From positions 1-64,000 of the forward strand of contig NIVC01003610.1 of the NCBI GenBank assembly GCA_002269645.1: a DNA stretch of 64,000 nt, written 5' to 3'. This document shows, piece by piece, positions 10,342-37,654 of the stretch. Numbering within the stretch: position 1 is the first letter of the stretch; each line of letters opens with the position of its first letter. The translations under genes and the position numbers were made by a program. A model generated the notes under the pieces. It searched no databases. It saw nothing but the letters and a program-made list of their open reading frames with translations, and had not been told where the DNA came from. The stretch comes from Macrostomum lignano. Lineage: Eukaryota.

Positions 10342-10597
10342 AGAGCAGAGCACAGACCCAGCTGAATGACCTGGCCTAGAGAGCAGAGCACAGACCCAGC
10401 TGAATGACCTGGCCTAGAGAGCAGAGCACAGACCCAGCTGAATGACCTGGCCTAGAGAGCAGAGCACAGACCCAGCTGAATGACCTGGCCTAGAGAGCAG
10501 AGCACAGACCCAGCTGAATGACCTGGCCTAGAGAGCAGAGCACAGACCCAGCTGAATGACCTGGCCTAGAGAGCAGAGCACAGACCCAACTGAATGA
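10319..10597. repeat. 38-bp minisatellite, 7 full copies plus a partial copy
   Basis: Unit CAGCTGAATGACCTGGCCTAGAGAGCAGAGCACAGACC starts at 10321, 10359, 10397, 10435, 10473, 10511 and 10549, with a partial copy at 10587. Confidence 0.95.
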
Positions 10598-12090: not shown

Positions 12091-15000
12091 ATGAAGCTTC
12101 TGTGGGTCTCCGTGTATCTCCTGGTGCAGCTGCTTCTCTGCTTCGGCTCAGCAAGCGCGAGGCGCATCGCAGTGCTGGCTCAGACAGGCAGCGCCGACAG
12201 GTCCCTGGTGGAAGCTGCTGTGAGCAAGCTGGTCAACGGGCACTGGGTCTTCCCGCTGTTCAAGACGGAGCCTCTGAATTTCGAGTGGCTACAAGTTGCC
12301 GACGCTTTGGAAGCGGTTCAGAGAGGTGTTCAATTTTTCCACTGCAACTCTTTTATCACCTCAAAAATCAATTTATCACCACAGATTTCAAGACAAAACG
12401 AGTGCAGGAGACGGTGCGACATAAGGCTAACCGCAGTTTCGTGTTAGATTGACGCTAAAATAATTAGGCTGAGGTATTGGGTGGCCCGAGAATTACTAGT
12501 AGGCGTTACGTTACGCGGATCATTAGCATCTGTACTGTTTGGTATGACAGGGGTTGGATCTGAATCACACAGGTACAACGATACATTGTTCGGAGTCTTT
12601 CAACCAGCAAAGCTTTGTGGTTTGCTAACAAACCAGGTGAAATTGACAACTTTAACTTGTACTTTTAGCATGCAGCTCACCTACTCTCAGTGGCACGATT
12701 GTGATCGGGAACTGCGCATTTGTCTCAGATGTAATGAAACTGTCTGACTACATCAGCGTTCCTGCCATCACGCTCTCCAGTGACCTCTGCCAGCTTAGCA
12801 GCACCGGTAACTTTCTGAGCTTTGACATGTCCACTGATTTATCTCACTGGTTTTCGCTACCAGAAATCGCAAACCGAAACAAACTTTGCAGGTTTGAGCC
12901 TCGCATCAACGTCCAACGCGACAAGCTTTTTAGAAGCCGCAGCGGCAGTTTTGCAGCGGGTTGCGGCACCAGTGGCCGCTGTGCTCCACGACGAGTTCCA
13001 AGGTAAGTCCGAAGTTTCCCGATTAAAAATGAACTAGCCCATCAGATTCAGAAAGGATTTCACTCGCGCTTCAGACCACAAGCTCGTTGAGGAATTGCAG
13101 CTGGAGCTCTCCGCCAAAGGAATCGCTAGCTCAACTTTTCAGATAAATAATTCCGTCGGTAATCTGAATCTCACGTTGACAAACATGATCAAAGCTAAAA
13201 TTAGAAACATCGTAGTTCTGTGCGACCCAGGCACTGTTTTAAATATCGTTAACTTGGTAAGCTTTGAACTGCTTCAGTTTTGAGCATTCTGTTTAAAATG
13301 ATAGAAGAATTTTTCCAGGCCCAGAAAACAGGAACTCTGCAGCCGAACTACTTCTGGACAGTGATCGACACAGGAGTTCGACTTGCGTCGATCGAGGACC
13401 TGCTTCCTGCAAACGAGTCTGCAAACATTCTTGTGATCCGAGAGTCGGCCATCGACCTGAAAACGGCCTCAGCCGGTTGCACCTCACAGCTCAAGACCGT
13501 GTTTCCGGACTGCCAAACAAGCAGATACTCGGTAATAAGCCTTTATCTACAAACTTCTTGACAGATCTTAGTCGCTGTCGCTACCAAAAGACCCCTGAAC
13601 ATACCCGCAGATGCTGGAGCTGAAGGCGGTAGAGGCCGTGCTGTCGTTCGCCAGCGCTACGCATAGCTTACTAGACAGTTCCGGTCTTCCTGCCAGCAAC
13701 GTGTCGTGTCGGCCGTTGCAGCCGTGGTCGGCGGGTCCCGCACTGGCTGCGCAGCTGAAACAGGTACGGATTGAACAGGTGCTCAATTGATGATCTTCTT
13801 TGCGTTCAGATCTAATGTATTGACCTGTGCTGCACCTTATCCCCTTCTAATCTACTTTTATTTACTCTATCAACACAGCAGCAGTATCGATCATGATAGA
13901 TTACAAAATCTGTCTCAGTCTGCTCAGTCGTACCCGTTCACCTTTGTGTAGCTGCGACAGCCGCTGTCAGCTGGGAGCAGCTGGACACCCAGCGACTACT
14001 TCCTGGAGGTGCAGGCTACGTTCCACGATGAGTTCTCCGACCCGGTCCGCTTCGTCAACAGCGGCCGCTTCTTTGTAGGGAACGGCTCTCTGAGGTCAGC
14101 TTCCGCTACAGAGGTCGGAGCCTCATCTTCCCCAACACGTTTATCGACTTTAAAAATCGCACCTTAAGAGTCTGTGCGCCTGCGGTAAGCGTAGTGCGAG
14201 GTTGCGTTTGATTTCGTCTGTCGGGGGGGGGGGGGGGCTGCTCTCTTATTACTTGCATGTTGTAATTTACTCTTTGCATGCCGCCACCCCAGTCGGGTCA
14301 GTTATTTTAACCTTTTGCTGGCCATTTGACTCTGAATTCTCGGCTCTTACAGTAGTTTAGTTTATTGAAATTAAATAATGAGGCTACATGGTTTTCATAG
14401 TAGCATTCACATTTCAACTTTAGTCGCGGCCGTACATGCAGTACTCAAACGGAACGGTTGGCATTCCTGGTGCAATTTCCACCGACATCATTCACTTTCT
14501 CTCACTGCATCTGAACTATTCGTAAGTTACCTGAAATACACAAATGGGCTGAAATAGTAAGTTCCCAAGAATTTCCTGTCCACACCCTCGCAGCTACTCG
14601 CTGTTCGCTCCTGCGGACAATCAGTTCGGAGCGCCAGACCCGGCCTCGGTCTATTACACGGGCTGCATTGGCATGATTCAAAGAGGCGTAAGAAATATTC
14701 ACTTTTTAATCAGAATGTTTTGAAAAAATACTGGCTTCGAAGAGGGTACCCCCTGCTTTGCTCTGATTTGCAGGAAGCAGACATCACCATTCCCATGGCT
14801 ATTAACACATTTCGATCCAAGGTGATCGACTACTCTCAGGAGTACATGTTCTCATCGAATGCCATCTTGGTCAAGCGGCCGAATTCCGAGTCCAAGCTGT
14901 GGAATGTGTTTACGCCGCTTGCCTGGGACACGTGGCTGCTGATAGTCTGCATGCTCCTGTTGGTGCCGGGTGTCATCTTTCTGTTTGCCAGGCTCAGCCC

Positions 15001-17108
15001 GTTCTCCGCCTGGAACCTTGGTCTGCGATTCGCGTTTGCGGACGAGGTCTGGCTGAAGGAGTACATCTGGTCCGCCATAGGCAGCTTCATGCAGCAGGGC
15101 CAGGATTTCTATCCATTCGCCATGAGCCCCCGGACTGTTTTGGCGTTCTGGTGGATGCTCACTGTGATCATTTTTGGCACCTATACAGGTAAGTGTAGTG
15201 AGTGAAACGAGACTAGACTGCTTGTTGTATAGGACTCGTTATTCTGCGCAAATCTGCGCTTGCGTGCGCATTTTCGCGAACTACAGGGTTGCTGTAGTTT
15301 GTTTTTGTTGTTGTTGTTGTCGTTGTCGTCGATAGTTGCCGAAAGCTTGCAGGCGAGAAGAATTGCGATCAGTATATTTATTGAGTAATTGAGCTGAGTC
15401 AAGCTAAAGTCGCACCATGCACATTTGATATTGTACGCATAAGGGGAGAGCTAGCAGAATCACGCGGCGCAGCCGCTAACAACCGCCCCAACACACACGA
15501 TAGTAGGCGCTGCCTACAGTAAGTGTTCGAAAAGCCTTTTTGAGGCAAACGCTTTGTAGCTCGTATAGAAACATGAGCACAGTTTGTTTTTTAATGCCGC
15601 TATAAACTCCTATATCCGTCCCGATGAAGGCGATTTGACCTCAAAACTGGCCGTGACGGTTTCCAAGTACCCAATCGAAAGCCTGGAACAGCTGGTGTCC
15701 CTGCCGCAGTACAAGGCCATGGTGCCGCTCGGGACCAACATCTACTCTTCGATGATGGCCGCCACAGAGGGACCGCTGGTCAAGCTGCGGCAGATGAAAG
15801 TGCTGACGCAGTCCTTTGACACCTGCGCCATGAGTGTGAGCTACTAGCGCCAGCTGTACAAGCGCATTTGCACCAAACCACAGTTCATTACACAAGCTTA
15901 AGCTGCAATCAAACTGCTTTCAATTCTTTCAGCTGATTACCAGCACGGATCCTTACCTGGTGTGCATCTCTGACGTGAACGTGAACCTTCTGTACGCCAG
16001 CCGGTACTGCCAGTACGTGTACAATGTTTACAACTACTTCAATCCGTACTACATTGCAATCGCCTTTCCAAAGGACTCATATTATATCGATGCATTCAAC
16101 TTTTTGTAAGTAAAACTTCATTCTGACGCTTTGCGATGCTCTTTAATGCGTTTATATTAGTCTCAAAACGAAAATCTGAAACGAAAGGCAAAATGAACTC
16201 TTGGATTGGCAAATGGTGCTTTCAAGTAGCTTGTACTTATAATTTGTGGTTCACGCACATCAGTAAAACAAATTTAACTTTATTCAAATTTCAAAAATTT
16301 TATGAAAAGCAGCTGTAAGTTATTATCCAAAAACTAAACTATTAAAACTGACTAAACTTAGATGTTGCAGTAACACGTGGGATGCATTTGCATGTATTAA
16401 CAGCTAGAAATTTTTTCTGCTTGAATCGAATACTTCTAGTTAATATTTGGTATTGTCTTTAAGTGACTAATGGTACTATATTTAAATTCGAAAACTTCTT
16501 ATTGTTATTTTAGGTTCTTTTCGTAAATCTATGCGTATAATTTTTGGCCTACGAGCTACAATGTTACGACGTTAAGACGAAAGAACGTCATTAAGAAAAC
16601 GTAAAAAATTAGCAAAACAATTAGATCTCTGGGAAATAAAGCCAGGTGTCATCGTTATATTTCACCGTTATATTTTAGTTTAGCCCTAAATACCAATTAA
16701 AGGCAAATTAAAATTTCGCTAATGAAACTAAGAAACTTTTGATTCAATAATCATACAGACTTTTTAATAACTCTTTATTAATATTATCTTATCTTTTTAT
16801 AATAACTCATACTTATTATTCTGGGTACGAAAGCGTAAAGGCAGCATTTGCCTGCCAATTGCAGCATTCAGCGTGGCAAAGCTGCGGGCGTGGTCGACCT
16901 GATCAACAGCAAGTACATTCCACTGACCTCAGACTGCGGCACGGGCGCCACAGCGGCTGCCGAGGCGGCGGCCATCCCGCTGGAGGGCGTGGGAGGCGCC
17001 TACATCCTCAGCTTGGGGCTGTACGTGTGCGGCTTCCTCATCCTGCTGGTGGAGCTGCTCTGGGTGATCCTCATGAAGAAGGAAACGCTGGATTTTCCAG
17101 GATTTTGA
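12091..17108 (+). CDS. Divergent ionotropic glutamate receptor-like subunit, paralogue 1 (13 exons; apparent 1-nt deletion in exon 7)
   Basis: Exons: 12091-12325, 12669-12806, 12892-13002, 13075-13256, 13319-13531, 13611-13763, 13952-14184, 14424-14521, 14594-14687, 14774-15188, 15630-15835, 15933-16105, 16865-17108. Contains a signal peptide, ATD, S1 (ADITIPMAINTFRSKVIDYS), M1, M2 (WSAIGSFMQQG), M3 (WWMLTVIIFGTYTGDLTSKL), S2 and M4. The sum is 2495 nt, one short of a whole number of codons; exon 7 is 233 nt versus 234 nt in paralogues 2 and 3. Confidence 0.88.
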
Positions 17109-18402: not shown

Positions 18403-18478
18403 TCTGACTGTAGCGTCGAATTCTCCAATCTGCCCGAAAAAATCTACGCTCGAAACAACAACAAATCTAGCCAGTGAG

Positions 18479-21400
18479 ATGCCTGATACTAAAGCTTCTG
18501 ACCGAGCTGTCGCCGCGCCGCTCTGCGCTCTCCTCGCGCTGTCCACCTGCGCAGGAGCCGTCAAACTGGCGGTGGTCTCTCAGAACGGCAGCATTGGAGA
18601 CTTGGCCGTGAGCCGAGCCATCGACCTGCTCATCAACAACTACTGGAAGCTGACGGCATTCAAGACAAACCCCATGACGCACGTCTTTGTTCAGGCCAGC
18701 GATGCTGTCGAGGCTATGCGAGCTGGTACGCGTGCGCTGGTATACTCACTGCATCGCCAGTTAATGCAGTATAATTTTGAGCCACGGAGCGAACCATTTC
18801 AACCCCAATTTTTACGGAAGGTAGCCGAATTTTAGGTTTAGGTACAAATGATTTTTTCATGTCCGTAAAATTCCAGTGTGCAACACACCCGGCCTGCACG
18901 GAGTAGTCGCCGTGGGCTCCTGCGCCTTCGTGACCGACGTTCTGGCCGTCTCCACCTCAATCAGCGTGCCGGCCGTCGCTGTCTTTCGCGATCTCTGCTT
19001 CATCAACAATACCAATCGTATTTATATTTATTAAACTCTGTCTTTATGGCATGTGCTCCATGAAACAGTCAGTTAAAGAGTTTGCATTCCTCACAACTCC
19101 GCAGCCGTGACTCTAATCTCGAACCCGGACGTCGGAACTTTCCTGGAAGCTGCTGCGACAATCGTGAGTCGGCTCGAGCAAAAGGCCATCGTTGTCTTTT
19201 ACGATAAGTATCAAGGTAAGTCTCAAAGGTGCACGTACAGCTTTGCAGTGTGAGTCTCACAAGCTCTCTAATCTGATTGCAGATCACCGTCTTCTGGAGA
19301 AGCTGCAGCAACTGCTATCGGATAAAAGCATCCCCAGCCTGACTTTCCAAATCGATGACTCAGCAAGCAACCTGACCAGCATACTGAGAAACGTCGTTTG
19401 GAAGCGTTATCGAAACACATTGGTTCTGTGCACGCCTGAAAATGTCAACGCCGTTTTACGAGAGGTGCGAATTCATAATTGTTTTTGGCACACTTTATAC
19501 CTATCCTGGCATTCACTAAGAGCATGTTAATTCATTAGAGCCTTTCTCAACACAGGCTCGGAACACGGGCACACTGAAACTCAACTACTTCTGGACAGTG
19601 ATCGACACGGGAGTTCGACTTGTGTCCATCGAGGACCTGCTCCCTACAAACGAGTCTGCAAACATTCTTGTGATCCGAGAGTCGCCCATAGACTTGAAAA
19701 CGGCCTCAGCCGGTTGCACCTCACAGCTCAAGGCCGTGTTTCCGGACTGCCAAATGAGAAAATACTCGGTAAGCCTTTATTTACACACTTCTGCAATAGA
19801 TTCTAGGCGCTGTCACCAGCCCCAGACTCTGATCATGACTGTAGATGCTGGAGATGAAGGCAGTAGAGGCCGTGCTGTCGTTCGCCAGCGCTACGCAGAG
19901 CCTACTGGACAGTTCCGGTCTTCCTGCCAGCAACGCGTCGTGTCGGCCGTTGCAGCCGTGGTCGGCGGGTCCCGCACTAGCTGCACAGCTGAAGCAGGTA
20001 CGGATCGTACCGGAGCAGGTGCTCATGGATGATGTCGTCTGTCTCAGTCTGCTCAGTCGAAACCGTTCACCTTTGTAGCTGCGACAGCCGCTGTCAGCTG
20101 GGAGCAGCTGGACACCCAGCGACTACTTTCTGGAGGTGCAGGCTACGTTCCACGACGAGTTCTCCGACCCGGTCCGGTTCGTCAACAGCGGCCGTTTCTT
20201 TGTAGGGAACGGCTCTTTAGAGGTCAGCTTCCGCTACAGAGGTCGGAGCCTCATCTTCCCCAACACGTTTATCGACTTTAAGAACAAGACTATTCGGATT
20301 TGTTCTGTTGCGGTTCGTTGATTTTTCTTGTTAGTAAACCAACTGTCGTGTCCTCTTTGTTTCGCATTTGTTTCGCATTGTTTCGCATTTTAGACGAAAC
20401 CACAAACTGAGTACTTAAACGGAACTTTTGGCGTTGCCTCGGGTATCACTGCTGATCTGGCAGCTTTCTTTTCAAAACATCTGAATTTTAGGTAATGCCG
20501 AGTTAAGAGATGTTGATGTTATTTAAGTCGAACAGCTGAATCTCAAATTTTTATTTTAATCGGAAACACTTTTTTACTTTCAGTTACACGATTTTTACGC
20601 CCCCAGACAACCAGTTTGGGGCTCCAGTCCCTGGCTCGCTCTTCTACACAGGCTGTATCGGAATGGTTCAGAAGGGAGTGAGTGCCCTTGTTTTTTCCTT
20701 TTGCGAGAAATAAATATGCTGAATAGAGACTACATTAAGCTGGAAACGGTCCGCGGACGAATTGCAGGAGGCCGACTTTGCTACGCCCTTTGCCACCACG
20801 TTGATCCGGTCGCAGGTGATTGACTATTCAGAAGAGTTTATTTTCTCCTCCAACACCATTCTGGTGAAAAGACCCATGGCCGAGTCCAAGCTGTGGAATG
20901 TGTTTGCGCCGCTCTACTGGGATTCCTGGACTCTAATTGTGAGCATGTTTTTGGTAGTGCCGCTTCTCATCTACGGGTTGGCTAGCAGCAGCTCATTCAC
21001 TGGCTGGAACCTTCAACTCAGCTTCGCCTTTGCTGACGAGGTCTGGCTGAAGGATTACATTTGGTCAGCGATTGGCAGCTTCATGCAGCAGGGTCAGGAC
21101 TTTTATCCCTTTGCCATGAGTCCTCGAGTGGTGATGGCTTTCTGGTGGATGTTGACGGTTATCATATTCGCTTCGTACACTGGTAAGTTTGGTGCGTCTG
21201 TGACTTGTCAGCAATGCATGAAACCATGCAGCAATACAGGGACTCTCATTTGCAGGTGACCTCACGGCCAAGCTGGCAGTGACTGTGGCCAAGTACCCAA
21301 TCCAGAGCTTGGACGATCTCATCTCCAAGCCGCACTACAAGGCCATGCTGCCCAGAGGCACCAACATCTACGCTGCTGTGCTGAGCGCCACAGAGGGGCC

Positions 21401-22190
21401 GCTTGCCAAGCTTAGGGATCAGTGGGAGTTAGTTGACTCCTTCGACACCTGCGCTACGAATGTAAGTCCAGCGATGATGGCTTTGGCTTGTAGTTTTGGA
21501 TTTGATGCGTCAATTCAGCGTAGCGTTTTTCAAATTTGAATAAAGAGTGTTTGCTTGCGAAAATGCGAATCCAATTTTAAAAAATAGTCTTCGTATTCCT
21601 CGAATCGCGCAGCTGGTGACCATCAAGGACCCATACCTGGTGTGCATTTCGGATCTGATTGTTAGTCTGCACTACGCCAACGAGCTGTGCGAAGACATCT
21701 ACAACGCCGACAACTACTTCAACCCGTACTTTATGGCCATGGCCTTCCCTCAGGACGCTTACTACCTGCCCGCGGTTGACTTCCTGTGAGTTGGCCTGAA
21801 TGGCTGACGGCTTGGAGCTCAGAAGTTCTGTAGTTTAGTCTCAGGTTGTCAGCGAATGCATGAACGATGGAATCTTAGGAAGAGAATTTTTGAAATGTTT
21901 TTACTCTCAAACAGTTCTGAATGGAGCAGTTTTTTTTTTCTTTTAGGATTCAGAGAAGCAAAGCGAACGGCGTCATGAGCATGATCACTGGCAAGTACAT
22001 CCCCCAGACTGCCGAGTGCGGCTCCGCCGTCAGCGCGGCTGCTGAGGCTGCGGCCATCCCCCTGGAGGGCGTTGGCGGTGCCTACATCGTCAGTCTAGCA
22101 TTCTACGTGTGCGGCGGCGTCATCCTGCTCGTGGAGCTTTTCTGGGTGTTCAAACTAAAGAACGAGCCGCTGGATTTTCCGGGTTTTTAA
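18479..22190 (+). CDS. Divergent ionotropic glutamate receptor-like subunit, paralogue 2 (13 exons, intact, 836 aa)
   Basis: Exons: 18479-18725, 18877-19017, 19105-19215, 19283-19464, 19556-19768, 19845-19997, 20079-20312, 20394-20491, 20584-20677, 20768-21182, 21256-21461, 21613-21785, 21947-22190. All introns are GT-AG and the 2511 nt total is in frame. Motifs: FATPFATTLIRSQVIDYS, WSAIGSFMQQG, ASYTGDLTAKL, M4 GVGGAYIVSL, end EPLDFPGF*. Confidence 0.92.
18868..20292. repeat. Near-identical paralogous block (paralogue 2 exons 2-7 with introns; partner 26970-28396)
   Basis: Exons and introns 2-6 align almost base for base with paralogue 3; intron 1 and intron 7 onward do not align. Confidence 0.9.
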
Positions 22191-23038: not shown

Positions 23039-23670
23039 CCTGCATCAGGTAACCGAGTGTTTGAGTGCTTGAGGCAACCCTGCATCAGGTAACCGAGTGT
23101 TTGAGTGCTTGAGGCAACCCTGCATCAGGTAACCGAGTGTTTGAGTGCTTGAGGCAACCCTGCATCCGGTAACCGAGTGTTTGAGTGCTTGAGGCAACCC
23201 TGCATCCGGTAACCGAGTGTTTGAGTGCTTGAGGCAACCCTTCATCAGGTAACCGAGCGTTTGAGTGCTTGAGGCAACCCTGCATCAGGTAACCGAGTGT
23301 TTGAGTGCTTGAGGCAACCCTGCATCAGGTAACCGAGTGTTTGAGTGCTTGAGGCAACCCTGCATCAGGTAACTGAGTGTTTGAGTGCTTGAGGCAACCC
23401 TGCATCAGGTAGCCGAGTGTTTGAGTGCTTGAGGCAACCCTGCATCCGTTAACCGAGTGTTTGAGTGCTTGAGGCAACCCTGCATCAGGTAGCCGAGTGT
23501 TTGAGTGCTTGAGGCAACCCTGCATCCGTTAACCGAGTGTTTGAGTGCTTGAGGCAACCCTGCATCCGGTAACCGAGTGTTTGAGTGCTTGAGGCAACCC
23601 TGCATCAGGTAGCCGAGTGTTTGAGTGCTTGAGGCAACCCTGCATCAGGTAGCCGAGTGTTTGAGTGCTT
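23039..23670. repeat. 40-bp minisatellite, ~16 copies
   Basis: Unit TGCATCAGGTAACCGAGTGTTTGAGTGCTTGAGGCAACCC with single-base variants and no spacers. Confidence 0.95.
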
Positions 23671-26200: not shown

Positions 26201-29200
26201 ATGACCGCTTGGCACGCCAGCTTCCGAGCTGTCGCCGCGCCGCTCTGCGCTCTCCTCGCGCTGTCCACCTGCGCAGGAGCCGTCAAACTGGCGGTGGTCG
26301 CTCAGAACGGCAGCATTGGAGACTTGGCCGTGGGCCGAGCCATCGACCTGCTCATCAACAACTACTGGAAGCTGACGGCATTCAAGACAAACCCCATGAC
26401 GCACGTCTTTGTTCAGGCCAGCGATGCTGTCGAGGCTATGCGAACTGGTTGGTCTTATTACTAATAAGCTTTTCAGATGAGGCGTTGTGGTTCTGTCGCT
26501 CGGATAAGGAGATAACCTTGTAGCTTATCTCCTTAATCGCTCAAATCTACAAATCTAAATATTTACTGAGCGATTAAACTAGGCCATCAGAATATTGCTT
26601 ATATCATTTCCGCTTTAAAGTCAGAGACTCCTGAGGAGAGTCAGATTTCGATACACATTAGAAACTAAGATGCACTACACTACCAGTTGTTTTGCACCTG
26701 CCTCGGTTTTATATCTTCAACGCATTCTTTTTCGATTTAAAACTTAACAATACAGACAGTTTAGCTACAAGCGTAATTCAAGGCACATAAGTCTAGACAC
26801 TTCCATAAATGCCAGTTTAAAACATAATCCAAACCGCGCAAAACGATTTGTCCCACTACAAGTAGCATGTCTAGCAACGTACGAGTATGGTCAATAAATC
26901 TGTCACTGTCACCAAGCCACAGGCAAACAAAATTTGCATAGGTGCAGTTTTCTATGAAGACTGAAAAACAAATTCCAGTGTGCAACACACCCGGCCTGCA
27001 CGGAGTAGTCGCCGTGGGCTCCTGCGCCTTCGTTACCGACGTTCTGGCCGTCTCCACCTCAATCAGCGTGCCGGCCGTCGCTGTCTTTCGCGACCTCTGC
27101 TTCGTCAACAATACCAATCGTAATGATATTTATTAAACTCTGTCTTTATGACATGTGCTCCAAGAAACAGTCAGTTAAAGAGTTTGCATTCCTCACAATT
27201 TTGCAGCCGTGACTCTAATCTCGAACCCGGACGTCGGAACTTTCCTGGAAGCTGCTGCGACAATCGTGAGTCGGCTCGAGCAAAAGGCCGTCGTTGTCTT
27301 TTACGATAAGTATCAAGGTAAGTCACAAAGGTGCACAGCTTTGCAGTGTGAGTCTCACAAGCTCTCTAATCTGATTGCAGATCACCGTCTTCTGGAGAAG
27401 CTGCAGCAACTGCTATCGGATAAAAGTATCCCCAGCCTGACTTTCCAAATCGATGACTCAGCAAGCAACCTGACCAGCATACTGAGAAACGTCGTTTGGA
27501 AGCGTTATCGAAACACATTGGTTCTGTGCACGCCTGAAAATGTCGACGCCGTTTTACGAGAGGTGCGAATTCAGGATTGTTTTTGGCACACTTTATACCT
27601 ATCCTGGCATTCACTAAGAGCATGCTAATTCATTAGAGCCTTTCTCAACACAGGCTCGGAACACGGGCACACTGAAACTCAACTACTTCTGGACAGTGAT
27701 CGACACGGGAGTTCGACTTGTGTCCATCGAGGACCTGCTCCCTACAAACGAGTCTGCAAACATTCTTGTGATCCGAGAGTCGCCCATAGACTTGAAAACG
27801 GCCTCAGCCGGTTGCACCTCACAGCTCAAGGCCGTGTTTTCGGACTGCCAAATGAGCAAATACTCGGTAAGCTTTTATTTACAAACTTCTTCTGCAATAG
27901 ATTCTAGGCGCTGTCACCAGCCCCAGACTCTGATCATGACTGTACCAGTAGATGCTGGAGATGAAGGCAGTAGAGGCCGTGCTGTCGTTCGCCAGCGCTA
28001 CGCAGAGCCTACTGGACAGTTCCGGTCTTCCAGTCAGCAACGCGTCGTGTCGGCCGTTGCAGCCATGGTTGGCGGGTCCCGCACTGGCTGCGCAGCTGAA
28101 GCAGGTACGGATCGTACCGGAACAGGTGCTCATGGATGATGTCGTCTGTCTCAGTCTGCTCAGTCGAAACCGTTCAACTTTGTAGCAGCGACAGCCGCTG
28201 TCAGCTGGGAGCAGCTGGACACCCAGCGACTACTTCCTGGAGGTTCAGGCTACGTTCCACGACGAGTTCTCCGACCCGGTCCGGTTCGTCAACAGCGGCC
28301 GCTTCTTTGTAGGGAACGGCTCTTTAGAGATCAGCTTTCGCTACAGAGGTCGGAGCCTCATCTTCCCCAACACATTTATTGACTTTAAGAACAAGAGTCT
28401 GCGGATTTGCGCTGTCGCGGTAGGTGGAAGAGCAAAGAAATGAAAAATTTCGGTTATCTCTTTAGTCCTAAAATAGTTTTTCATTTTCAGTCGAAGCCCT
28501 ACACCATGTACTCCGGCGGGTTAGTGGGCAATGCTTCTGGCATTACAGCCGATTTGGCTGCGTTCTTTTCGAAGCATCTCAACTTCACGTACGATTGATT
28601 TACTTTAAATAAATGCTGGGGCTTTTGTCTAAACATCATATAATTTAGTTAAAGAGTTAAACATTAATTTTTCAGCTACTCGATCTTTACGCCACCGGAC
28701 AACCAGTTTGGCGCCCCGTCTCCTGGCTCCCCGTACTTTACAGGCTGCATCGGCATGGTGCAAAAAGGCGTGAGTAGCCCAGACTAACCAATTATTTCGA
28801 CAAGCTTGTCATTCTGAAATTGAACTCTTCCTCAAATCACATTTAGGAGGCCGACTTCGCCACACCATTCGCCATCACGACAATCCGATCGAAGGTGATC
28901 GACTATTCAGAAGAATTCCTTTTCTCCTCAAACACCATCCTGGTGAAAAGGCCCATGGCTGAGTCCAAGCTGTGGAATGTGTTTGCGCCGCTCTCCTGGG
29001 ACTCCTGGACTCTCATTGTGGCCATGTTCCTGGCCGTACCGCTCCTTATCTACGGGTTAGCTCGGCTGAGTCCATTCACTGGCTGGAACTTGAACTTGCC
29101 CTTTGCTTTTGCTGACGAGGTCTGGCTCAAAGAGTACATCTGGTCGACAGTGGGCAGCTTCCTGCAGCAGGGCCAGGACTTTTATCCGTTTGCCATGAGC

Positions 29201-30549
29201 CCTCGGACAGTATTGGCTTTCTGGTGGATGCTCACCGTTATCATTTTTGCTACCTACACTGGTGAGTCGGCCTTCTGGTCACTGTCTCTACACTTTTGAG
29301 ATGTTTTATAGACCTTCAAAATCGGAGTTTGACAATTTTTACAAGCAAGTGTGTTTTATGGCGTAGATTAACTGCTCGAATCAAAACTCAGGCAAAATAT
29401 AATAGAACTTGCTTAGCTATTTTTTTATTGTTTCTGATTGCTTGTAACTTGCGTTTTTTTGCGATCATAAGAACCGCTCTTCGGCACTGCTCAGGGGACC
29501 TCACGGCCAAGCTGGCAGTGACTGTGGCCAAGTACCCAATCCAGAGCTTGGACGATCTCATCTCCAAGCCGCACTACAAGGCCATGCTGCCCAGAGGCAC
29601 CAACATCTACGCTGCTGTGCTGAGCGCCACAGAGGGGCCGCTGCTGCAACTGCGCAAGCAATGGATGGTGGTTGACTCCTTCGACACCTGCGCTACCAAT
29701 GTAATTACATATAACTGATGAGGATTAAGAGTTAGACTTAGGCAAGGAAGGTACTTGTACTCAATTTTTTCTGATCTACATTTGCAAAATATACCAACCC
29801 AACTTCAGTTGGTGAGGATGCCGGACCCATACCTGGTGTGCATATCGGACCTCAGCATCAGTTTGTTCTACGCTAACGAGCTCTGCAGTGAGATCTACAA
29901 CGCAGAGAACTACTTTAACACATATTATTTGGCTATGGCCTTCCCACAGGATGCATACTACCTGCCTGCCTTTGACTTCCTGTGAGTGGGAACGAGGGAT
30001 CAGTAATGTGTGGATGCGAGTTGTGAAAAAGTATCCCCATGCACTCGAAAATTACTGCAATTATTCTTTTACTCTAAATTAATAGGTCTCTTGCAAACTT
30101 TAAACCTCAAACCTCGAATTTTAAATCATTATTTGTATCATTTAAAAATTCGAACGAACTTTATGTACCATAAAATTGACAGTTTTGCCTGAAACAGAAG
30201 TTCTGCCTTCTAGTGAGACTGCATCTGCAAGTGCTTCGTACTGTAAATTCTACAATAATTGGTATTCGTTTTTTGCCAAGTCTCCTTTCAAAATATTCCT
30301 CTCAGGATTCAGAGAAGCAAAGCGAACGGCGTCATGAGCATGATCACTGGCAAGTACATCCCACAGACTGCCGAGTGCGGCTCCGCCGTCAGCGCAGCTG
30401 CTGAGGCTGCGGCCATCCCCCTGGAGGGCGTTGGTGGTGCCTACATCGTCAGTCTGGGCCTCTACGTGTGCGGCGGCCTCATCCTGTTGATTGAGCTGCT
30501 CTGGGTGTTGCTGTTGAAGAAGGAGTCGCTGGATTTTCCGGGTTTTTGA
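26201..30549 (+). CDS. Divergent ionotropic glutamate receptor-like subunit, paralogue 3 (13 exons, intact, 836 aa)
   Basis: Exons: 26201-26447, 26979-27119, 27207-27317, 27381-27562, 27654-27866, 27952-28104, 28186-28419, 28491-28588, 28676-28769, 28847-29261, 29495-29700, 29809-29981, 30306-30549. Exon lengths equal those of paralogue 2. Motifs: WSTVGSFLQQG, ATYTGDLTAKL, end ESLDFPGF*; AATAAA at 30582. Confidence 0.92.
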
Positions 30550-31843: not shown

Positions 31844-32696
31844 TATATGATGCTTAAAACGTTATTTAACTTAAAAAGTAAAAGCCACATGATCTAGGAT
31901 AATCTTTTTTTACCTTTTTTATAAATGTACTACAAGTATTTTGGCGAAAGTCGTGGCGCCGTCGCCCCTTTTTTTGCGTCTCGCCTGCGTGAGCTTAAAA
32001 TATTTTCTACTTAAAGAGTTTTTCCAATTTCTAGCATCCCTGTTTGCATTCGATGCGCCAAATGTAGCTTTAATTTGAGCTGTTGCTTTTACGGGGTTGT
32101 TTCAGGAAATACCCTTTCGTACCAATAGTGACCTTGGATGTTACTACTAAAAGAAAAAAACCAGCGTTCTTTAGGTTTGATGAAGGAAAAGTCCCGCCTG
32201 GACAATGAGAAACCCGATCGCTGAAGCGAACCTCATTAAATAAGATATCGAAGGTGAAGCCAGGCAATTTGAAGGTTGCCAAGCCCTGCGGTAGATTCTA
32301 TTTCATAGAGATGCGGAACTCAGCAGTCCTGAGTCCCTTCTACCGCGGGTGTTTTGCCACCGGACCAACAGCACCGCGACTAAATAGCTGTAACTGGAAA
32401 CCCAATCGACTCAAGCTTGTTATCCGAAAAAGGTGAGATCTTTCTGGCTGCAAAGACAGGCATCAGGATGTAGTACAGAACACATCCCATCTTATGCTGC
32501 CTTGAAAATCGCCTGATCTCGTTAGAACCTTCCCATTTTTACTTAATGAGACTGCAGTTGAATAACCAGCCTCTGATCGATCGGAAACATCTGATACCAA
32601 AACCAGCTCCAGTTCAGCCAGATCTCAATAAATAGCTCCAGTGTCCCACTCCGGCAGCGGCTCGCGGCTCTCACACACGCGATCTTTAAGTCAGTC

Positions 32697-35600
32697 ATGT
32701 GGCACGAGCTGCGAACGCTGCTGCTCCTGCTGGCCCTGCACGCCTGCAGCGGGTCATCCGTGCGCCTGGCTGTTGTAAGCGAAGCCGGAAGTCTCGCGGA
32801 CAGTTCGATCATCACCACAGCGGTGGACAAGCTGGTCAACGGAAACTGGAGGTATCCGGCATTCAAGACCAGTCCGATGTCGCTGGAGCTGCTGCCGACT
32901 GCGGACTCAGTGGAGGCTGCGCAGAGAGGTAAAAACAGCTTGCGATACAAATGTATTGTAGAATTCTAAGAAAGAAAATTATGTACTCGTACTTTGGTGA
33001 CAATCAATAGCTGATTAGGTTCAACGACGACTTGCTTGCTTACCCGGAAAATCTCTTCTGAAACTTCAGTGTGTCGATCGACAGGTCTCAACGGCTTGGT
33101 CGTCGTCGGCTCTTGTCAGTTCGTCTCGGATGTGCTCAAAATCTCTGGCTCCCTACAATTACCGACAGTCGCAGTTCTCAGAGGCCTTTGTCGGCTACCC
33201 AGTGTGCCAGGTAAAACCCTTATTACCACAACCTATCTACTGACGCACACTTGCTTACATCACAGACAAGAATGAATCGCATGTCTTTACAGACTCAGCG
33301 ATCGTATCGAGTCCACTGGCGACTGACTTCTTGAGGGCGACCGCAGAAGCAATGGACCGAGTCTCCGCTAATCTGGTCGCTGTCCTTCACGACAGACAAC
33401 AGGGTGCGCATGTCTTCCTCAAGATTACTCGTAACGCCCCATTTGTAAGTTGACAGCAATGCCTTCCTCAACCATGGTGGCCAACACTCGTCATTGCAGA
33501 CCACTTGCTGCTTGAGCAGCTTCAGCAACTGCTCTCGGAGAAGAGAATCGCCAGCATGATGTTTCAGTTCGACGAGTCGGCCACCAATTTGACACAAATC
33601 CTGCAAAACAGCGTCAAGGCTCAGATTCGATACTGTGTGGTCGTCTGCGAGCCCGACAAGATCCCACTCGTCTTCGAGCAGGTGAGCTCAGGTACAAATT
33701 CTTTCGCACAATCGATTAGGGCTTAATATCATTTGGTTGTCATTCCAGGCTCGGAACACAGCCACACTGCAGATCAACTACTTCTGGACCGTGATTGACA
33801 CAGGAATTTCGCCAAGAACTATCGAGACTCTGATCCCCGCGAATGGGTCTGCGAACATCCTCTTGATCCGTGAGTCGGCAGTTCTTCTCAAAGAAATGGA
33901 CTGCTCTGTAGATCTCGGAGTCGTGTATCCGGACTGCCAGTTCAGCAAGCGTTCGGTGAGGAACTCGTTCCCTGCAAACTTCTTCTGCGATGGAGCTTAG
34001 GCGCTGGCGATCTATCTGCAGTAGACCCTGAATATCCCTCAGATGCTGGAGCTGAAGGCGTTGGAGGCCGTGCTGTCATTCGCCAGAGCTACACAGAGCC
34101 TGCTGGACAGCTCCGACCTCGGCCTGACCGCCAGCAACGCGTCGTGTCGGCCGCTGCAGCCGTGGTCGGCGGGTCCCGCAGTGGCTGCGCAGCTGAAGCA
34201 GGTTGGAGTTCAGTTGCCTGTCTGACTCAGATTCTTAGCGACATGTGCGATTTGTGGTTGAGTTTGCTTTACACCGGCATACTTAATAGCTGAATCAGAG
34301 AACAGAAAGCAAAGCTTACTGGAACCACGGCTGTAATTAATGCTTAACCCCATATTTCCTGGCATGCCTCATAGCAGCGGCTCAGCCCAGCCAACGGAAG
34401 TGCGGGGCACCGGAGCGACTACTTCCTGGAGATGCTGGGCCTGCTTAGCAACCCGGAGGCAGTCGCGGAACTAGTGCCAAGCGGCCGGTTTATCGTCGAG
34501 AACGGCAGCCTTGTAGTGACCTTCGAGTACAAGGAGCGCGAGCTGCTGTTTCCCAACACCTTCGTGGACTTCAAGGGAGCTCGACTGCGGGTCTGCGCGC
34601 CGCCGGTAAGGGCTTTCTTTTCAGCGAAATATGTAACTTTTGCCTCGTTTCTCGAATTTACTTGCAATCAAATATCTCTTTTGGTGCAGATCTTAAATAA
34701 TAATAATTGATTACCCATGCCCCAATGGTCAAGCGACAGCTCAGCCGCAGCTATTGCGCGGCGCCTCTGAATGCTGCGTACGGCTGTTCAGTCCAAGGAC
34801 TCTCAATCGCTACTCACCCTCAATTATCCCAGCTAATGTTGGTACCCATTTTTCAGCTTTGTGAACTGAAGCAATGCAGAGTTATGTTTTATTGTTCATG
34901 CTCAAAGACAAATTGTTTCGAGCGGGTCGAGAATCGAATTCCCGACCTTTCAGTCATGAGTCAGACGCACTCCCAATGGGCTACAACCCCCCTGAAGACG
35001 CTGAGGTTGTCTGATGAAGCTTAATTTTGTTTTAAATTGTGCTTGGAGTAATGAAGTAGTGTTCGATTCATACAGTTGTGCAAACAGTAAAACGCTGGAA
35101 ATGACTTAATTCATATAATGAAGCAAAACTGGCATGATTTAATTATCTTGTCTGCATGCTAAGCTGATACTCTGCATGAACCAATCCAGTTTCCACCTTA
35201 CACGGTCTACGAGAACTACACATTTGGCAGAGCTTCTGGACACTCGGTCGAAATGCTTAGCTACTTTACCAGGCACCTCAATTTTACGTAAGCCATATTA
35301 TTTTTCATCAGTCATCTCTACATGAAAATATGCTTCATTTTTTATGCCTCAATTTGAAGGTACGACCTGTTCTCTCCGCCGGATAACCAGTTCGGGGCAC
35401 CTGTGGAGGGCTCACCCTACTTTACTGGCTGCATCGGCATGCTGCAGAAAAGAGTGAGCGCAGTGAACATACGAGCGTATGTTCACTTCCAAATGAATTC
35501 AACACACTGAATGACTGAATCTGTTTCTGTCTTTCAGCAAGCGGATTTCGCGATGCTGTTCGCTACTACTACTTTCCGCCATAAAGTAGTCGACTACTCG

Positions 35601-37654
35601 GATGAGTACCAGTTCTCGTCCAACACCATCCTAGTGAAAATGCCTCCACCAGAGTCCAAGCTGTGGAATGTGTTCACGCCGCTCTCCTGGGACTCTTGGC
35701 TGCTCATTATTGCCATGTTCGTCATTGTTCCAGTCGTTATCTTCATTTTCGCCAAGCTCAGTCCCTTTAGCGCCTGGACTTTGGGCTTGCCTTATGCGTT
35801 TTCTGACGAAGTCTGGCTAAAGGAATACGTCTGGTCGGTCATTGGCAGCTTCTTGCAGCAGGGCCAGGACTTTTACCCGTTCTCGATGAGTCCTCGAACT
35901 GTCATGGCGTTCTGGTGGATGCTCACAGTAGTCATTTTTGGAGCATATACAGGTGGTTAAGCTAGGTTGTTTTATCAAATCTAATGCTTATGACTGCAGT
36001 TGATCAAATGTTAGTGCGTTTTCTATCCCTTTCCTTCAGGGGACCTCACGGCCAAGCTTGCTGTGACGGTGGCCAAGTACCCGATCGAGAGCTTGGAGGA
36101 TCTGATCGCCAGGCCGCACTACAAGGCCATGGTTGCCCAGGGCACCAACATCTACGGCTCAATCATGCTGGCGACGGAAGGTCCCTTGACTATGCTACGC
36201 AAACAGATGGAGCTTGTTGACACAATGGCCACCTGCGCCGAGACTGTGAGTTTGAGTGTCATGGTTTTAGATTGATTTACATTCGATGAAGTCAACAAAG
36301 CCTGAGGCTCTCAGTCAGGTCTGAAAAAGCACTTCACCGAACTTACCCTCAGCTCCTCAAGCCGGACGCGAGCCCGTACCTGGTGTGCGTCTCAGACCAG
36401 AGCAGCAATTCTTATTACGCCAGCGCATTCTGCAAGCAGGTTTACCAAGCCAAAAATTTCTTCAACTTTTACTACTTGGCTATGACGTTTCCACAGGATG
36501 TCTACTACCTTCCAGCATTTGACTTTCTGTAAGTTTCATATTCTTCATTATCCTTTAATGTTCTTGAATATAGCTACCTTCATTAGCTGTCATATATAGC
36601 TGTCATTAGGTTTTATGACATTTGGTTATATTTTATTTATTTTATACTTTGGTTATATTTTATTACACGTATAGTGCCAGGTGAAAAAAAAACTAACTGA
36701 GCTTTGCAGCCGCAATTTTACGATTTTTTCGGCTTCAAATCCCCACCAGCGACAACCAAACTTCAAAACCCAGCACGACATTCCACAACCAAACCTCGAA
36801 CAACAGAATAACACTCCACAACCAAACCTCTAACAACAGAATAACACTCCACAACCAAACCTCGAACAACAGAATAACACTCCACAACCAAACCTCGAAC
36901 AACAGAATAACACTCCACAACCAAACCTCGAACAACAGAATAACACTCCACAACCAAACCTCGAACAACAGAATAACACTCCACAACCAAACCTCGAACA
37001 ACAGAATAACACTCCACAACCAAACCTCGAACAACAGAATAACACTCCACAACCAAACCTCGAACAACAGAATAACACTCCACAACCAAACCTCGAACAA
37101 CAGAATAACACTCCACAACCAAACCTCGAACAACAGAATAACACTCCACAACCAAACCTCGAACAACAGAATAACACTCCACAACCAAACCTCGAACAAC
37201 AGAATAACACTCCACAACCAAACCTCGAACAACAGAATAACACTCCACAACCAAACCTCGAACCACAGAACGATACTATATTCTACAGCCGAACATTGAA
37301 CCACCACAGAACTAAGTGCCACAACCGAACCTTGAACCACCACAGAACTAAGTGCCACAACCGAACCTCGAACCAGAACATGTAAAGTCACAGCAAAAAC
37401 TCGAACCCTACAGACTGCAGCGCGGCAAGGAGAGCGGCTTCGTCGATGTGGTGACTCGCAAGTTCATTCCTTCGACAAGCGACTGCAACGTCAACACGGC
37501 CGCCGCTGAGGCCGCAGCCATCCCACTGGAGGGTGTGGGTGGCGCCTACATCGTCAGTCTGTCGCTCTACCTGTGCGGCGGTGTCATCCTGCTGATCGAG
37601 CTGTTCTGGGTGGTCAGGCTGCAGAGGGACCCGCTCGATATGCCCGGATACTGA
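32697..37654 (+). CDS. Divergent ionotropic glutamate receptor-like subunit, paralogue 4 (13 exons, intact, 830 aa)
   Basis: Exons: 32697-32928, 33070-33210, 33293-33403, 33500-33681, 33749-33955, 34043-34201, 34375-34605, 35190-35287, 35360-35453, 35538-35952, 36040-36245, 36353-36528, 37414-37654. The 2493 nt total is in frame. Motifs: WSVIGSFLQQG, GAYTGDLTAKL, end DPLDMPGY*. Confidence 0.92.
34708..34992 (-). mobile_element. tRNA-headed SINE copy (intron 7 of paralogue 4)
   Basis: The minus strand has A-box-like TAGCCCATTGG and B-box-like GAATTCGATTC. The body is shared with the copies at 40727 and 50138 (GACAGCTCAGCCGCAGCTATTGCG...GCTGTTCAGT.CAAGGACT). Confidence 0.7.
36780..37265. repeat. 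33-bp minisatellite, ~14.5 copies (intron 12 of paralogue 4)
   Basis: Unit AACAGAATAACACTCCACAACCAAACCTCGAAC, followed by two related ~35-bp variants up to ~37370. Confidence 0.95.

What the first reader, a model, noticed from the sequence alone, without database searches (positions are those of the whole stretch)
18868..20312. Paralogue identity repeatedly stops at the ATD / ligand-binding-domain junction (end of exon 7)
Seen: for paralogues 2/3 (18868-20292 versus 26970-28396), paralogues 4/5 (32527-34605 versus 47015-49088) and paralogue 1 versus 2/3, near-identity ends at or within ~20 nt of the exon 7 donor. S1 exons 8-10 then diverge at many residues (for example TKPQTEYLNGTFGV versus SKPYTMYSGGLVGN). 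Established: the iGluR ATD directs subunit assembly and S1/S2 form the ligand pocket. Inference: conversion or exon shuffling homogenises the assembly domain while the pocket diversifies, giving a modular same-assembly, different-ligand system.
Basis: partly seen in the sequence, partly recalled or inferred. Interest (0 to 1): 0.75.

Follow-up and report, generated by a model that had tools for sequence, protein, structure and literature searches.

The report
Domain-limited gene conversion in flatworm glutamate receptors
Five neighbouring glutamate-receptor genes of the flatworm Macrostomum lignano have repeatedly copied the DNA for their outer (amino-terminal) domain onto one another, and the three youngest copied stretches stop within about 35 bases of the same spot, where the ligand-binding domain begins; this is a clear but fairly ordinary case of partial gene conversion, and nothing here shows that it has a function.

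Summary
The window holds five tandem + strand iGluR genes of 13 exons each (P1-P5) from Macrostomum lignano. P2/P3 are about 98% identical from exon 2 to exon 7, introns included. P4/P5 are about 97-98% identical from 170 nt upstream of the ATG to exon 7. P1 carries a P2/P3-like patch from exon 5 to exon 7. Maximum-likelihood break points lie at -23, +2 and -31 nt from the exon 7 end, which encodes the ATD-S1 linker and first S1 strand. Synonymous divergence jumps there from 0.02-0.08 to about 1.1, and the introns become unalignable. The best explanation is repeated ectopic gene conversion between old paralogues. The functional reading ("same assembly, different ligand") is not supported. The LBD/TMD is under purifying selection (dN/dS 0.10-0.25) and is simply old. 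The ATD is the least constrained domain. P1 and P5 carry frameshifts inside the converted block. Other tracts end elsewhere (exon 6 donor, inside exon 11). Why three ends coincide is unresolved: a heterology barrier, selection against mixed LBDs, or chance (about 5e-4 if ends were uniform). Assembly error is unlikely but cannot be tested here.

The parts
12091..17108 (+). P1, an iGluR paralogue of 13 exons. It has a 1-nt deletion in exon 7 (near 14092) that shifts the frame. Exon 7 ends at 14184.
   Evidence: Gene model; deletion shown in the alignment. All other exons are open in frame.
18479..22190 (+). P2, an intact iGluR of 836 aa. Exon 7 is 20079-20312. Pfam domains: ANF_receptor, Lig_chan-Glu_bd, Lig_chan.
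   Evidence: model; Pfam; best solved relatives are GluA1 and GluD1/2, E about 1e-37.
26201..30549 (+). P3, an intact iGluR of 836 aa. Exon 7 is 28186-28419.
   Evidence: Its C-terminal 177 aa match UniRef A0A1I8JJU8 of Macrostomum lignano at 176/177 positions.
32697..37654 (+). P4, an intact iGluR of 830 aa. Exon 7 is 34375-34605. Intron 7 is 584 nt long and contains a dispersed repeat.
47185..51452 (+). P5, an iGluR paralogue with two 1-nt deletions in exon 4 (near 48050 and 48065). Exon 7 is 48858-49088.
   Evidence: The public M. lignano model A0A1I8JJF5 is this gene (790/830 identical) and also has to switch frame in exon 4.
18868..20289 (+). P2 side of the main P2/P3 conversion tract (partner 26970-28396). 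It runs from 9 nt before the exon 2 acceptor to 23 nt before the exon 7 donor and includes introns 2-6.
   Evidence: Over 18868-20312, which runs 23 nt past the tract to the exon 7 donor: 43 substitutions and 3 small indels in 1445 nt. dS is 0.04-0.08 inside the tract and 1.15 in exon 7 tail to exon 10. Break at -23 nt.
18503..18727 (+). P2 side of the exon 1 P2/P3 tract (partner 26225-26449). It ends at the +2 position of the intron 1 donor. Intron 1 itself is unrelated in the two genes (151 vs 531 nt).
32526..34610 (+). P4 side of the P4/P5 conversion tract (partner 47015-49093). It runs from about 170 nt upstream of the ATG to intron 7 position +5 and includes introns 1-6.
   Evidence: 97.0% identity over 2098 aligned nt. 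41 substitutions and 7 indel events. dS 0.02 inside the tract and 1.06 in exons 8-10. The boundary sequences are shown.
13346..14153 (+). P2/P3-like patch in P1 (partner in P2: 19583-20281), from exon 5 +30 to exon 7 -31, with introns 5 and 6 partly alignable.
   Evidence: dS 0.19 inside the patch; saturated in exons 1-4 and 8-10. Breaks. In the three-way site patterns, exon 7 is about equally close among P1, P2 and P3.
20282..20393 (+). The shared limit, in P2 coordinates: the last 31 nt of exon 7 (codons for the ATD-S1 linker and first S1 strand, ..FKN|KTIRICSVA) plus intron 7. Homologous points are 14154-14423, 28389-28490, 34575-35189 and 49058-49301.
   Evidence: Domain mapping.
21253..21402 (+). 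A further P2/P3 tract in the 3' half: the first ~147 nt of exon 11 (partner 29492-29641) have no differences, while the flanking introns cannot be aligned.
   Evidence: Permutation p=0.002. 100/100 identity in the window starting at 21262.
19728..19997 (+). An older tract shared by both paralogue groups: end of exon 5, intron 5 and exon 6 (in P4 about 33915-34201). It ends at the exon 6 donor.
   Evidence: Exon 6 is 88.5% identical between the groups, against 46-73% for the other exons. Its pS is 0.27-0.30 against 0.6-0.8 elsewhere. Intron 5 is about 70% alignable between the groups.

Best explanation
Five old tandem paralogues of an iGluR gene (synonymous divergence about 1 or saturated in most exons) exchange sequence by non-reciprocal ectopic gene conversion. 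The tracts are 0.2-2.1 kb of genomic DNA, introns included, and they have different ages. The oldest is an exon 5-6 tract shared by all copies. Next is an exon 5-7 patch between P1 and P2/P3 (dS about 0.2). The youngest two cover nearly the whole ATD-coding block in P2/P3 (dS 0.04-0.08) and in P4/P5 (dS 0.02). The P4/P5 exchange crossed 14.5 kb and an unrelated gene on the opposite strand. All of this is shown. The following is inferred. The three youngest tracts stop at the exon 7 tail or donor because what follows is the longest stretch of the gene without usable homology: the last 30 nt of exon 7, intron 7, the short and very divergent exon 8 (98 nt), intron 8 and exon 9 (94 nt). Heteroduplex or annealing cannot extend into it. 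Each conversion keeps the upstream block homologous, so the limit reinforces itself. Purifying selection probably adds a filter. A tract ending inside the LBD would combine S1 and S2 from different paralogues, whereas the ATD is a separately folding and weakly constrained module in which replacement is tolerated.
For: Identity includes introns 2-6 (94-100%) and synonymous sites. Tracts are bounded on both sides and the flanks cannot be aligned. A run-length permutation test gives p<0.0005, and two-rate break-point scans give 2lnLR of 134-298. No relic iGluR fragments lie outside the five genes, so the replacement was in situ. Divergence is uneven within and between tracts, which points to several events: 100% identity over about 450 nt around exons 4-5 of P2/P3, and three-way site patterns in exon 7. 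Six of 14 tract ends lie within 10 nt of a junction with a non-homologous intron (binomial p about 0.006). These include the exon 1 donor and exon 2 acceptor of P2/P3, the exon 7 donor of P4/P5 and the exon 6 donor of the old tract. Between unconverted copies, the exon 7 tail and exon 8 form the similarity trough of the gene (43-52% nt identity). dN/dS is 0.10-0.25 in the LBD/TMD. The ATD has the highest dN, about 0.55. This matches the relaxed constraint reported for the converted exons of SIGLEC11/16 (PMC5701461).
Against: The heterology-barrier idea does not explain how the first exchange between already diverged copies came to stop there; one example is the P1 patch inside a gene whose exons 1-4 are saturated against P2. 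Exon 10 is the longest exon and the most similar between the two paralogue groups apart from exon 6 (415 nt, 67-77% between the groups, 73-92% in P2/P3 windows). It would be a better recombination substrate than exons 1-4, yet it is not converted. That fits selection better than mechanics. Only three tract ends coincide, two of them involve P2, and the pattern was noticed post hoc. No outgroup is available, so donor, recipient and direction are unknown. The frameshifts in P1 and P5, if real, mean selection on those copies is currently absent.
Confidence: 0.7

Rival explanations
1. Homogenisation of the ATD is maintained by selection so that paralogues keep the same assembly or partner specificity while their ligand pockets diverge, giving a modular 'same assembly, different ligand' receptor set.
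For: The limit coincides with the structural ATD/LBD boundary. Two independent pairs show it. Exon 10, although the best homology substrate, is spared. Some pocket-lining positions differ within pairs, for example PFATTLIR vs PFAITTIR and SDLIVS vs SDLSIS. ATD (NTD) dimerisation is described as the first instructive step of AMPA-receptor assembly (PMC2992128).
Against: There is no sign of positive selection in S1/S2 (dN/dS 0.10-0.25). The ATD is the least conserved domain among unconverted copies (54% aa identity). That is not expected if a shared assembly code were being preserved across the array. Homogenisation is pairwise and recent (dS 0.02-0.08). P1 and P5 have frameshifts inside the converted block. 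There are no expression, co-assembly or ligand data.
Confidence: 0.15
2. The 5' blocks show the true, recent age of duplication (P2 to P3, P4 to P5). The 3' halves were later overwritten by unseen, more distant paralogues elsewhere in the genome, or the genes are hybrids made by unequal crossing-over in intron 7.
For: The tree topology is the same in both halves, ((P2,P3),(P4,P5)), and only the depth differs. The rest of the genome could not be searched.
Against: A recent tandem duplicate or a crossover hybrid should share its upstream flank. P2/P3 identity starts only at codon 9, and P4/P5 identity starts only 170 nt upstream of the ATG. P4 and P5 are separated by an unrelated minus-strand fibrinogen-domain gene. 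Intron 1 of P2/P3 is unrelated inside the 'young' block. The P1 patch has both of its ends inside the gene.
Confidence: 0.08
3. Assembly artefact. The near-identical blocks are mis-joined, collapsed or cross-polished copies in an assembly of a neopolyploid, repeat-rich genome.
For: M. lignano is a hidden polyploid that is difficult to assemble (PMC10733133). The block divergence of 1.5-3% is of the order expected for subgenome copies (my inference). Indel states in exon 4 of P5 differ between this window and the assembly behind UniRef A0A1I8JJF5.
Against: Each block is only 0.2-2.1 kb and sits between unique flanks on one contig, which is shorter than typical long reads. The blocks are not identical: they carry their own substitutions and indels. 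Cross-polishing cannot create alignable introns from unalignable ones. An independent public annotation of P5 shows the same P4-like ATD joined to the P5-specific LBD.
Confidence: 0.05
4. Conversion is real, but the coincidence of the three 3' ends is chance and has no cause.
For: Only three ends coincide, and two share a partner gene. Other tract ends lie at different places (exon 6 donor, exon 11 +147, exon 5 +30, upstream -170). The pattern was selected by eye.
Against: The probability under uniform placement is about 5e-4. The site is also the domain boundary and the similarity trough of the gene.
Confidence: 0.12

Closest known systems
Paired-receptor partial concerted evolution (SIGLEC11/SIGLEC16, SIGLEC5/SIGLEC14, CEACAM families)
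   Same: Repeated interlocus gene conversion is confined to the exons for the N-terminal extracellular domain of neighbouring paralogues, while the rest of the genes stays divergent. The converted exons are under relaxed constraint. A non-functional copy can take part (PMC5701461; PMC4042635 and PMC7042247 listed).
   Different: In those families the homogenised domain is the ligand-binding domain and the divergent part is the signalling tail. Here the ligand-binding domain is the part left divergent, and the homogenised part is the ATD. Recurrence across species is documented there but is untested here.
Human fetal G-gamma/A-gamma globin conversion bounded inside IVS2 (textbook case, recalled from my own knowledge and not checked here)
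   Same: Tandem duplicates have a near-identical 5' block, introns included, and a sharp drop in identity at a fixed point in or next to an intron. This is read as a conversion tract with a preferred end.
   Different: The globin boundary is at a simple-sequence (TG)n stretch that is thought to act as a hotspot. No motif shared by the five copies was found at the exon 7 / intron 7 boundary here.
AMPA/kainate/delta-type ionotropic glutamate receptors (GluA1, GluD1/2 are the best solved relatives)
   Same: The full ATD - S1 - M1/pore/M3 - S2 - M4 architecture is present. The pore has MQQG, and the arginine that binds the ligand carboxylate is conserved.
   Different: Identity to vertebrate subunits is low. 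M3 reads SYTGDLTAKLAV instead of SYTANLAAF. The residues equivalent to GluA2 Y450 and T480 are replaced (I or H, and A). The agonist is unknown.

Membership tests
Ionotropic glutamate receptor (iGluR) family | Amino-terminal domain of the LIVBP / ANF_receptor type | tested here: met
   PF01094 E=5e-7, residues 145-354 of P2. The alignment to GluA1/GluD runs from residue about 70-125 onward.
Ionotropic glutamate receptor (iGluR) family | Bipartite S1/S2 ligand-binding domain interrupted by the channel (Lig_chan-Glu_bd + Lig_chan), with the conserved Arg that binds the agonist carboxylate | tested here: met
   PF10613 (residues 431-532) and PF00060 (residues 547-810) both score above their cut-offs. 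The Arg is present in all five copies (..IRSQ/IRSK/FRSK/FRHK/IRYQ) at the GluA R485-equivalent column.
Ionotropic glutamate receptor (iGluR) family | Pore loop plus M1, M3 and M4, with the SYTANLAAF gating motif in M3 | tested here: inconclusive
   M1, the pore (SFMQQGQDFYP), M3 and M4 align to GluA1. However, the motif reads SYTGDLTAKLAV in all five copies. Channel function was not tested.
Interlocus (ectopic) gene conversion | A segment of sharply elevated identity between paralogues that includes silent sites and introns | tested here: met
   dS is 0.02-0.08 inside the tracts and about 1.1 outside. Introns 2-6 are 94-100% identical, while introns 7-12 cannot be aligned.
Interlocus (ectopic) gene conversion | The tract is bounded on both sides, the flanks are not shared, and no extra copy is created (this separates it from unequal crossover or segmental duplication) | tested here: met
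   5' ends lie at codon 9 (P2/P3), -170 nt (P4/P5) and exon 5 +30 (P1). Upstream and downstream flanks cannot be aligned. tblastn finds no further fragments.
Interlocus (ectopic) gene conversion | Statistical support for mosaic structure (a GENECONV-type test, break-point likelihood) | tested here: met
   My own permutation test of runs at 1243 variable sites gives p<0.0005 for the ATD tracts and p=0.002 for exon 11. 2lnLR is 134-298. GARD and GENECONV themselves were not run.
Interlocus (ectopic) gene conversion | Donor and recipient identified with orthologues or an outgroup | not testable with these tools
   No other Macrostomum genome or other M. lignano contigs could be reached.
Selectively maintained domain homogenisation (paired-receptor type) | Independent recurrence of the same domain-limited conversion in several lineages | tested here: inconclusive
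   Two independent pairs plus one patch within one array share the 3' limit. No other species or arrays were available.
Selectively maintained domain homogenisation (paired-receptor type) | The partners are co-expressed and the homogenised domain has the same function in both | not testable with these tools
   There are no expression or biochemical data. Frameshifts in P1 and P5 argue against current function of those two copies.

The most novel reading that the evidence does not exclude
The ATD-coding block behaves as a selectively maintained, exchangeable cassette. Conversion keeps pairs of subunits compatible in ATD-driven dimerisation (or in binding a shared ATD partner), while each keeps its own ligand-binding and channel core. 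That would give a flatworm-specific combinatorial iGluR system whose modularity is written into exon 7 / intron 7.
Probability: 0.12. Interest if true: 0.7.

Novelty: new member of a known kind. Interest (0 to 1): 0.4.

Why it matters
Partial-gene concerted evolution is well known in immune paired receptors and globins. I found no report of it for iGluR amino-terminal domains: a full-text search returned none. If the shared limit holds up in more paralogues or species, it would be a natural domain-swap experiment. It would show that the iGluR ATD can be exchanged between subunits whose LBD/TMD differ by 11-32% in protein sequence, and it would name subunit pairs to test for ATD-directed co-assembly. 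There is also a practical point for M. lignano annotation and phylogenetics. Trees built from whole genes or from the ATD alone will misdate these paralogues by about 20-50 fold in dS. The public model of P5 is a fused and frame-patched prediction.

Tried and rejected
1. Unequal crossover or hybrid-gene origin. Rejected because the upstream flanks are not shared and an unrelated gene lies between P4 and P5.
2. Insertion of a duplicated ATD fragment next to an old 3' half. Rejected because there are no relic ATD exons anywhere else in the window.
3. cDNA- or RNA-mediated exchange, considered because several ends sit on splice junctions. Rejected because introns 2-6 are copied along with the exons.
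4. A common sequence motif, simple repeat or transposon at the limit. Intron 7 differs in all five copies: a G15 run in P1, a 10-nt triplication in P2, and a dispersed repeat about 90 nt into P4's intron. Nothing is shared.
5. Structured RNA or tRNA-derived elements. None were found.
6. Positive selection in S1/S2. Pairwise dN/dS is well below 1. Site models are not feasible with five sequences.
7. GC-biased conversion. GC3 is not higher in the converted blocks (0.64-0.76) than in exons 11-13 (0.77-0.81).
8. Finding more paralogues. P0001 is not on record. The full-length search returned only the P5 model. The cluster look-up added nothing.
9. The first homology search suggested a different Macrostomum species, with 47% best identity. 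This was corrected when P0006 and P0005 proved to be P5 and P3 themselves.
Full report
WHAT IS IN THE WINDOW. The window carries five tandem genes on the + strand that encode full-length ionotropic glutamate receptors. Starting from stop-to-stop ORFs, I built GT-AG gene models of 13 exons for each gene, using matches between the paralogues and splice-site transfer. The genes are:
- P1, 12091-17108
- P2, 18479-22190
- P3, 26201-30549
- P4, 32697-37654
- P5, 47185-51452

P2, P3 and P4 have intact reading frames of 836, 836 and 830 codons. P1 has a 1-nt deletion in exon 7. P5 has two 1-nt deletions in exon 4. All other exons of P1 and P5 are open in frame. P2 matches Pfam ANF_receptor (residues 145-354), Lig_chan-Glu_bd (431-532) and Lig_chan (547-810). 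Its best solved relatives are GluA1 and GluD1/2, with E about 1e-37.

SPECIES. The organism is Macrostomum lignano. UniRef A0A1I8JJF5 (P0006) is a fused gene model of P5. It is identical to P5 at 790 of 830 aligned residues, and every mismatch falls where that model changes frame or skips sequence. UniRef A0A1I8JJU8 (P0005) is the C-terminus of P3, identical at 176 of 177 residues.

THE OBSERVATION. In 100-nt windows on pairwise alignments, P2 and P3 are 93-100% identical from 18870 to about 20270, introns 2-6 included. Identity then falls to 42-63% in introns 7-9 and to 73-92% in exon 10. P4 and P5 are 83-100% identical from 32526 to 34605 and cannot be aligned immediately afterwards. P1 resembles P2/P3 only from exon 5 to exon 7.

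Nei-Gojobori synonymous divergence shows the same steps:
- P2/P3: 0.039 (exons 1-4), 0.076 (exons 5-7), 1.15 (exon 7 tail to exon 10), 0.34 (exons 11-13)
- P4/P5: 0.02, 0.02, 1.06, 0.72 for the same four segments
- P1/P2: saturated, 0.19, saturated, 1.0 for the same four segments

A two-rate likelihood scan places the 3' breaks at -23 nt (support -54..-23), +2 nt (support -5..+2) and -31 nt (support -36..-28) relative to the end of exon 7. In the genome, P4/P5 identity ends at position +5 of intron 7. A permutation test on runs of matching variable sites gives p<0.0005 for all of these tracts. Exon 7 ends at residue 427. Pfam's Lig_chan-Glu_bd begins at about residue 424-431. The GluA1 alignment puts the last nine codons of exon 7 (KTIRICSVA) on the first S1 strand. 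The breaks therefore do lie at the ATD-LBD linker.

WHAT KIND OF EVENT. The identity covers introns and silent sites, so purifying selection on the protein cannot explain it. The identity is bounded on both sides. P2/P3 similarity begins at codon 9. P4/P5 similarity begins 170 nt upstream of the ATG. The P1 patch begins 30 nt inside exon 5. Upstream and downstream flanks cannot be aligned. P4 and P5 are separated by 14.5 kb that contains a minus-strand fibrinogen-domain gene. tblastn finds no leftover iGluR fragments outside the five genes. These facts exclude unequal-crossover hybrids and inserted duplicate fragments. What remains is non-reciprocal ectopic gene conversion between old paralogues. 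An RNA intermediate is excluded because the introns are copied along with the exons.

THE ARRAY IS A MOSAIC OF SEVERAL EVENTS.
- Exon 6, together with the end of exon 5 and a partly alignable intron 5, is 88.5% identical between the P1-3 and P4-5 groups. Its pS is 0.27-0.30, against 0.6-0.8 elsewhere. That old tract ends at the exon 6 donor.
- The P1 patch is older than the P2/P3 tract in exon 5 (12 sites with P2=P3 and P1 different) but not in exon 7, where the three copies are about equidistant. This implies a later P1-P2 exchange.
- Exon 1 and exons 2-7 of P2/P3 are near-identical, but intron 1 between them is unrelated sequence, 151 vs 531 nt.
- P2/P3 also share the first ~147 nt of exon 11 without a single difference (p=0.002). 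The first ~100 nt of exon 13 are 96-98% identical.

The exon 7 end is therefore a preferred limit for the youngest and longest tracts. It is not the only break point in the gene.

WHY THE SAME LIMIT. Three uniformly placed ends would fall within 33 nt of a 2511-nt CDS with probability about 5e-4. This figure is post hoc, and two of the three comparisons share P2. Six of 14 recognisable tract ends lie within 10 nt of a junction with a non-homologous intron (binomial p about 0.006). That is what homology-dependent repair predicts when heteroduplex or annealing cannot enter unrelated sequence. Between unconverted copies, the exon 7 tail and exon 8 form the similarity trough of the gene (43-52% nt identity), and they are flanked by unalignable introns and followed by the 94-nt exon 9. 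I therefore favour a self-reinforcing heterology barrier.

Two facts argue for an added selective filter. First, exon 10 is the longest exon (415 nt) and, apart from exon 6, the most similar between the two paralogue groups, yet it is not converted (dS 0.83 and 1.29). Second, the first exchange into an already diverged copy (P1) stopped at the same place. A tract ending within the LBD would join S1 and S2 from different paralogues. The ATD folds separately and is the least constrained domain here: dN is about 0.55 and amino-acid identity 54% between unconverted copies, against 49-73% elsewhere. This parallels the relaxed constraint reported for the converted exons of SIGLEC11/16 (PMC5701461). 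I cannot separate barrier from filter with five sequences.

NTD (ATD) dimerisation as the first instructive step of AMPA-receptor assembly is established (PMC2992128). Nothing tested here shows that homogenisation is maintained for that purpose.
- dN/dS in S1, S2 and the TMD is 0.10-0.25 in all pairs, and about 0.24 in exon 8. The LBD difference is old divergence under purifying selection.
The ligand-proximal part of exon 8 is identical in P2 and P3 (ASGITADLAAFFSKHLNF).
- The Arg, Gly-Thr and Asp anchor positions are conserved in all five copies. A few neighbouring positions do differ.
- Two of the five copies carry frameshifts inside the converted block.

ARTEFACT RISK. M. lignano is a neopolyploid whose assembly is difficult (PMC10733133). 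However, the blocks are 0.2-2.1 kb between unique flanks on one contig. They carry their own substitutions and indels. An independent public annotation shows the same junction between a P4-like ATD and the P5-specific LBD. Mis-assembly is unlikely but cannot be tested without reads. The frameshifts are less secure. The assembly behind A0A1I8JJF5 appears to have different indel states in exon 4 of P5, yet it still needs a frame change there.

COMPARISON AND NOVELTY. The closest known systems are the paired receptors SIGLEC11/16 and SIGLEC5/14 and the CEACAM families. In these, conversion is confined to the N-terminal extracellular exons. A second analogue is the gamma-globin pair with its fixed conversion boundary in IVS2, which I cite from my own knowledge. 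Unlike the paired receptors, here the ligand-binding domain is the part that stays divergent. A full-text search found no report of ATD-limited conversion in iGluRs. I classify this as a new member of a known kind, of moderate interest.

Noticed in passing
window 43375-51452; protein P0006: The public M. lignano protein A0A1I8JJF5 (1162 aa) is a fused and frame-patched model of P5. Its first ~350 residues come from + strand ORFs lying antisense to the fibrinogen-domain gene region and from upstream non-coding DNA. It also skips or re-frames parts of exons 4, 5 and 7.
   Followed up: partly
window 41643-44227, minus strand: An unrelated gene lies between P4 and P5. One ORF has a Fibrinogen_C domain (PF00147, E=1.7e-20). 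A 270-aa ORF beginning with a hydrophobic N-terminal stretch that may be a signal peptide (judged by eye, no prediction run) lies upstream of it on the same strand.
   Followed up: partly
window 53643-54424, minus strand: A claudin / PMP22-like four-pass membrane protein gene (PF13903) lies downstream of the array.
   Followed up: partly
window 10319-10597, 23039-23677, 24575-25100, 31436-31844, 36778-37373, 39229-39914, 53090-53606, 61446-62131, 62787-63482: The window is unusually rich in long, very regular minisatellites, with periods of 38, 40, 30, 14, 33, 43, 22/44/66, 34 and 21 nt and 88-100% unit identity. They lie between the receptor genes, and in one case (the 33-mer) they fill P4 intron 12 up to a few nt before the exon 13 acceptor.
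   Followed up: no
window 34698-34991, 40726-40967, 50127-50421: A dispersed repeat of about 250-300 nt (73-79% identity between copies) is present in P4 intron 7, in the P4-P5 spacer and in P5 intron 10. No tRNA or Rfam match was found. It starts about 90 nt after the P4 break point.
   Followed up: partly
window 18466-18481, 26188-26203, 32687-32699, 12081-12093: Every paralogue has CAG 2-4 nt upstream of its ATG. P2 and P3 share a 13-nt island (AGCCAGTGAGATG) surrounded by unrelated sequence. These may be spliced-leader trans-splice acceptors with very short 5' UTRs.
   Followed up: no
window 21256-21375 and homologous exon 11 starts (29495, 36040, 50505, 15630): The first ~120 nt of exon 11 (end of M3 and start of S2) are 87-100% identical at the nucleotide level among P2-P5, far above the neighbouring exons. 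This could reflect recurrent short conversions or a constraint at the nucleotide level.
   Followed up: partly
all five genes, M3 (e.g. window 21170-21290 in P2): The nearly universal iGluR gating motif SYTANLAAF reads (S/T/A)YTGDLT(A/S)KLAV in all five copies. The residues equivalent to GluA2 Y450 and T480 are I or H, and A.
   Followed up: no
window about 14223-14237 (P1 intron 7) and 20353-20390 (P2 intron 7): Intron 7 holds a G15 homopolymer in P1 and three tandem copies of GTTTCGCATT in P2. Neither is shared with the other copies.
   Followed up: no
window 56966-57123: A 158-nt near-perfect palindrome (87.7% self reverse-complement match) lies in the AT-rich region (about 30% GC) downstream of the array.
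   Followed up: no
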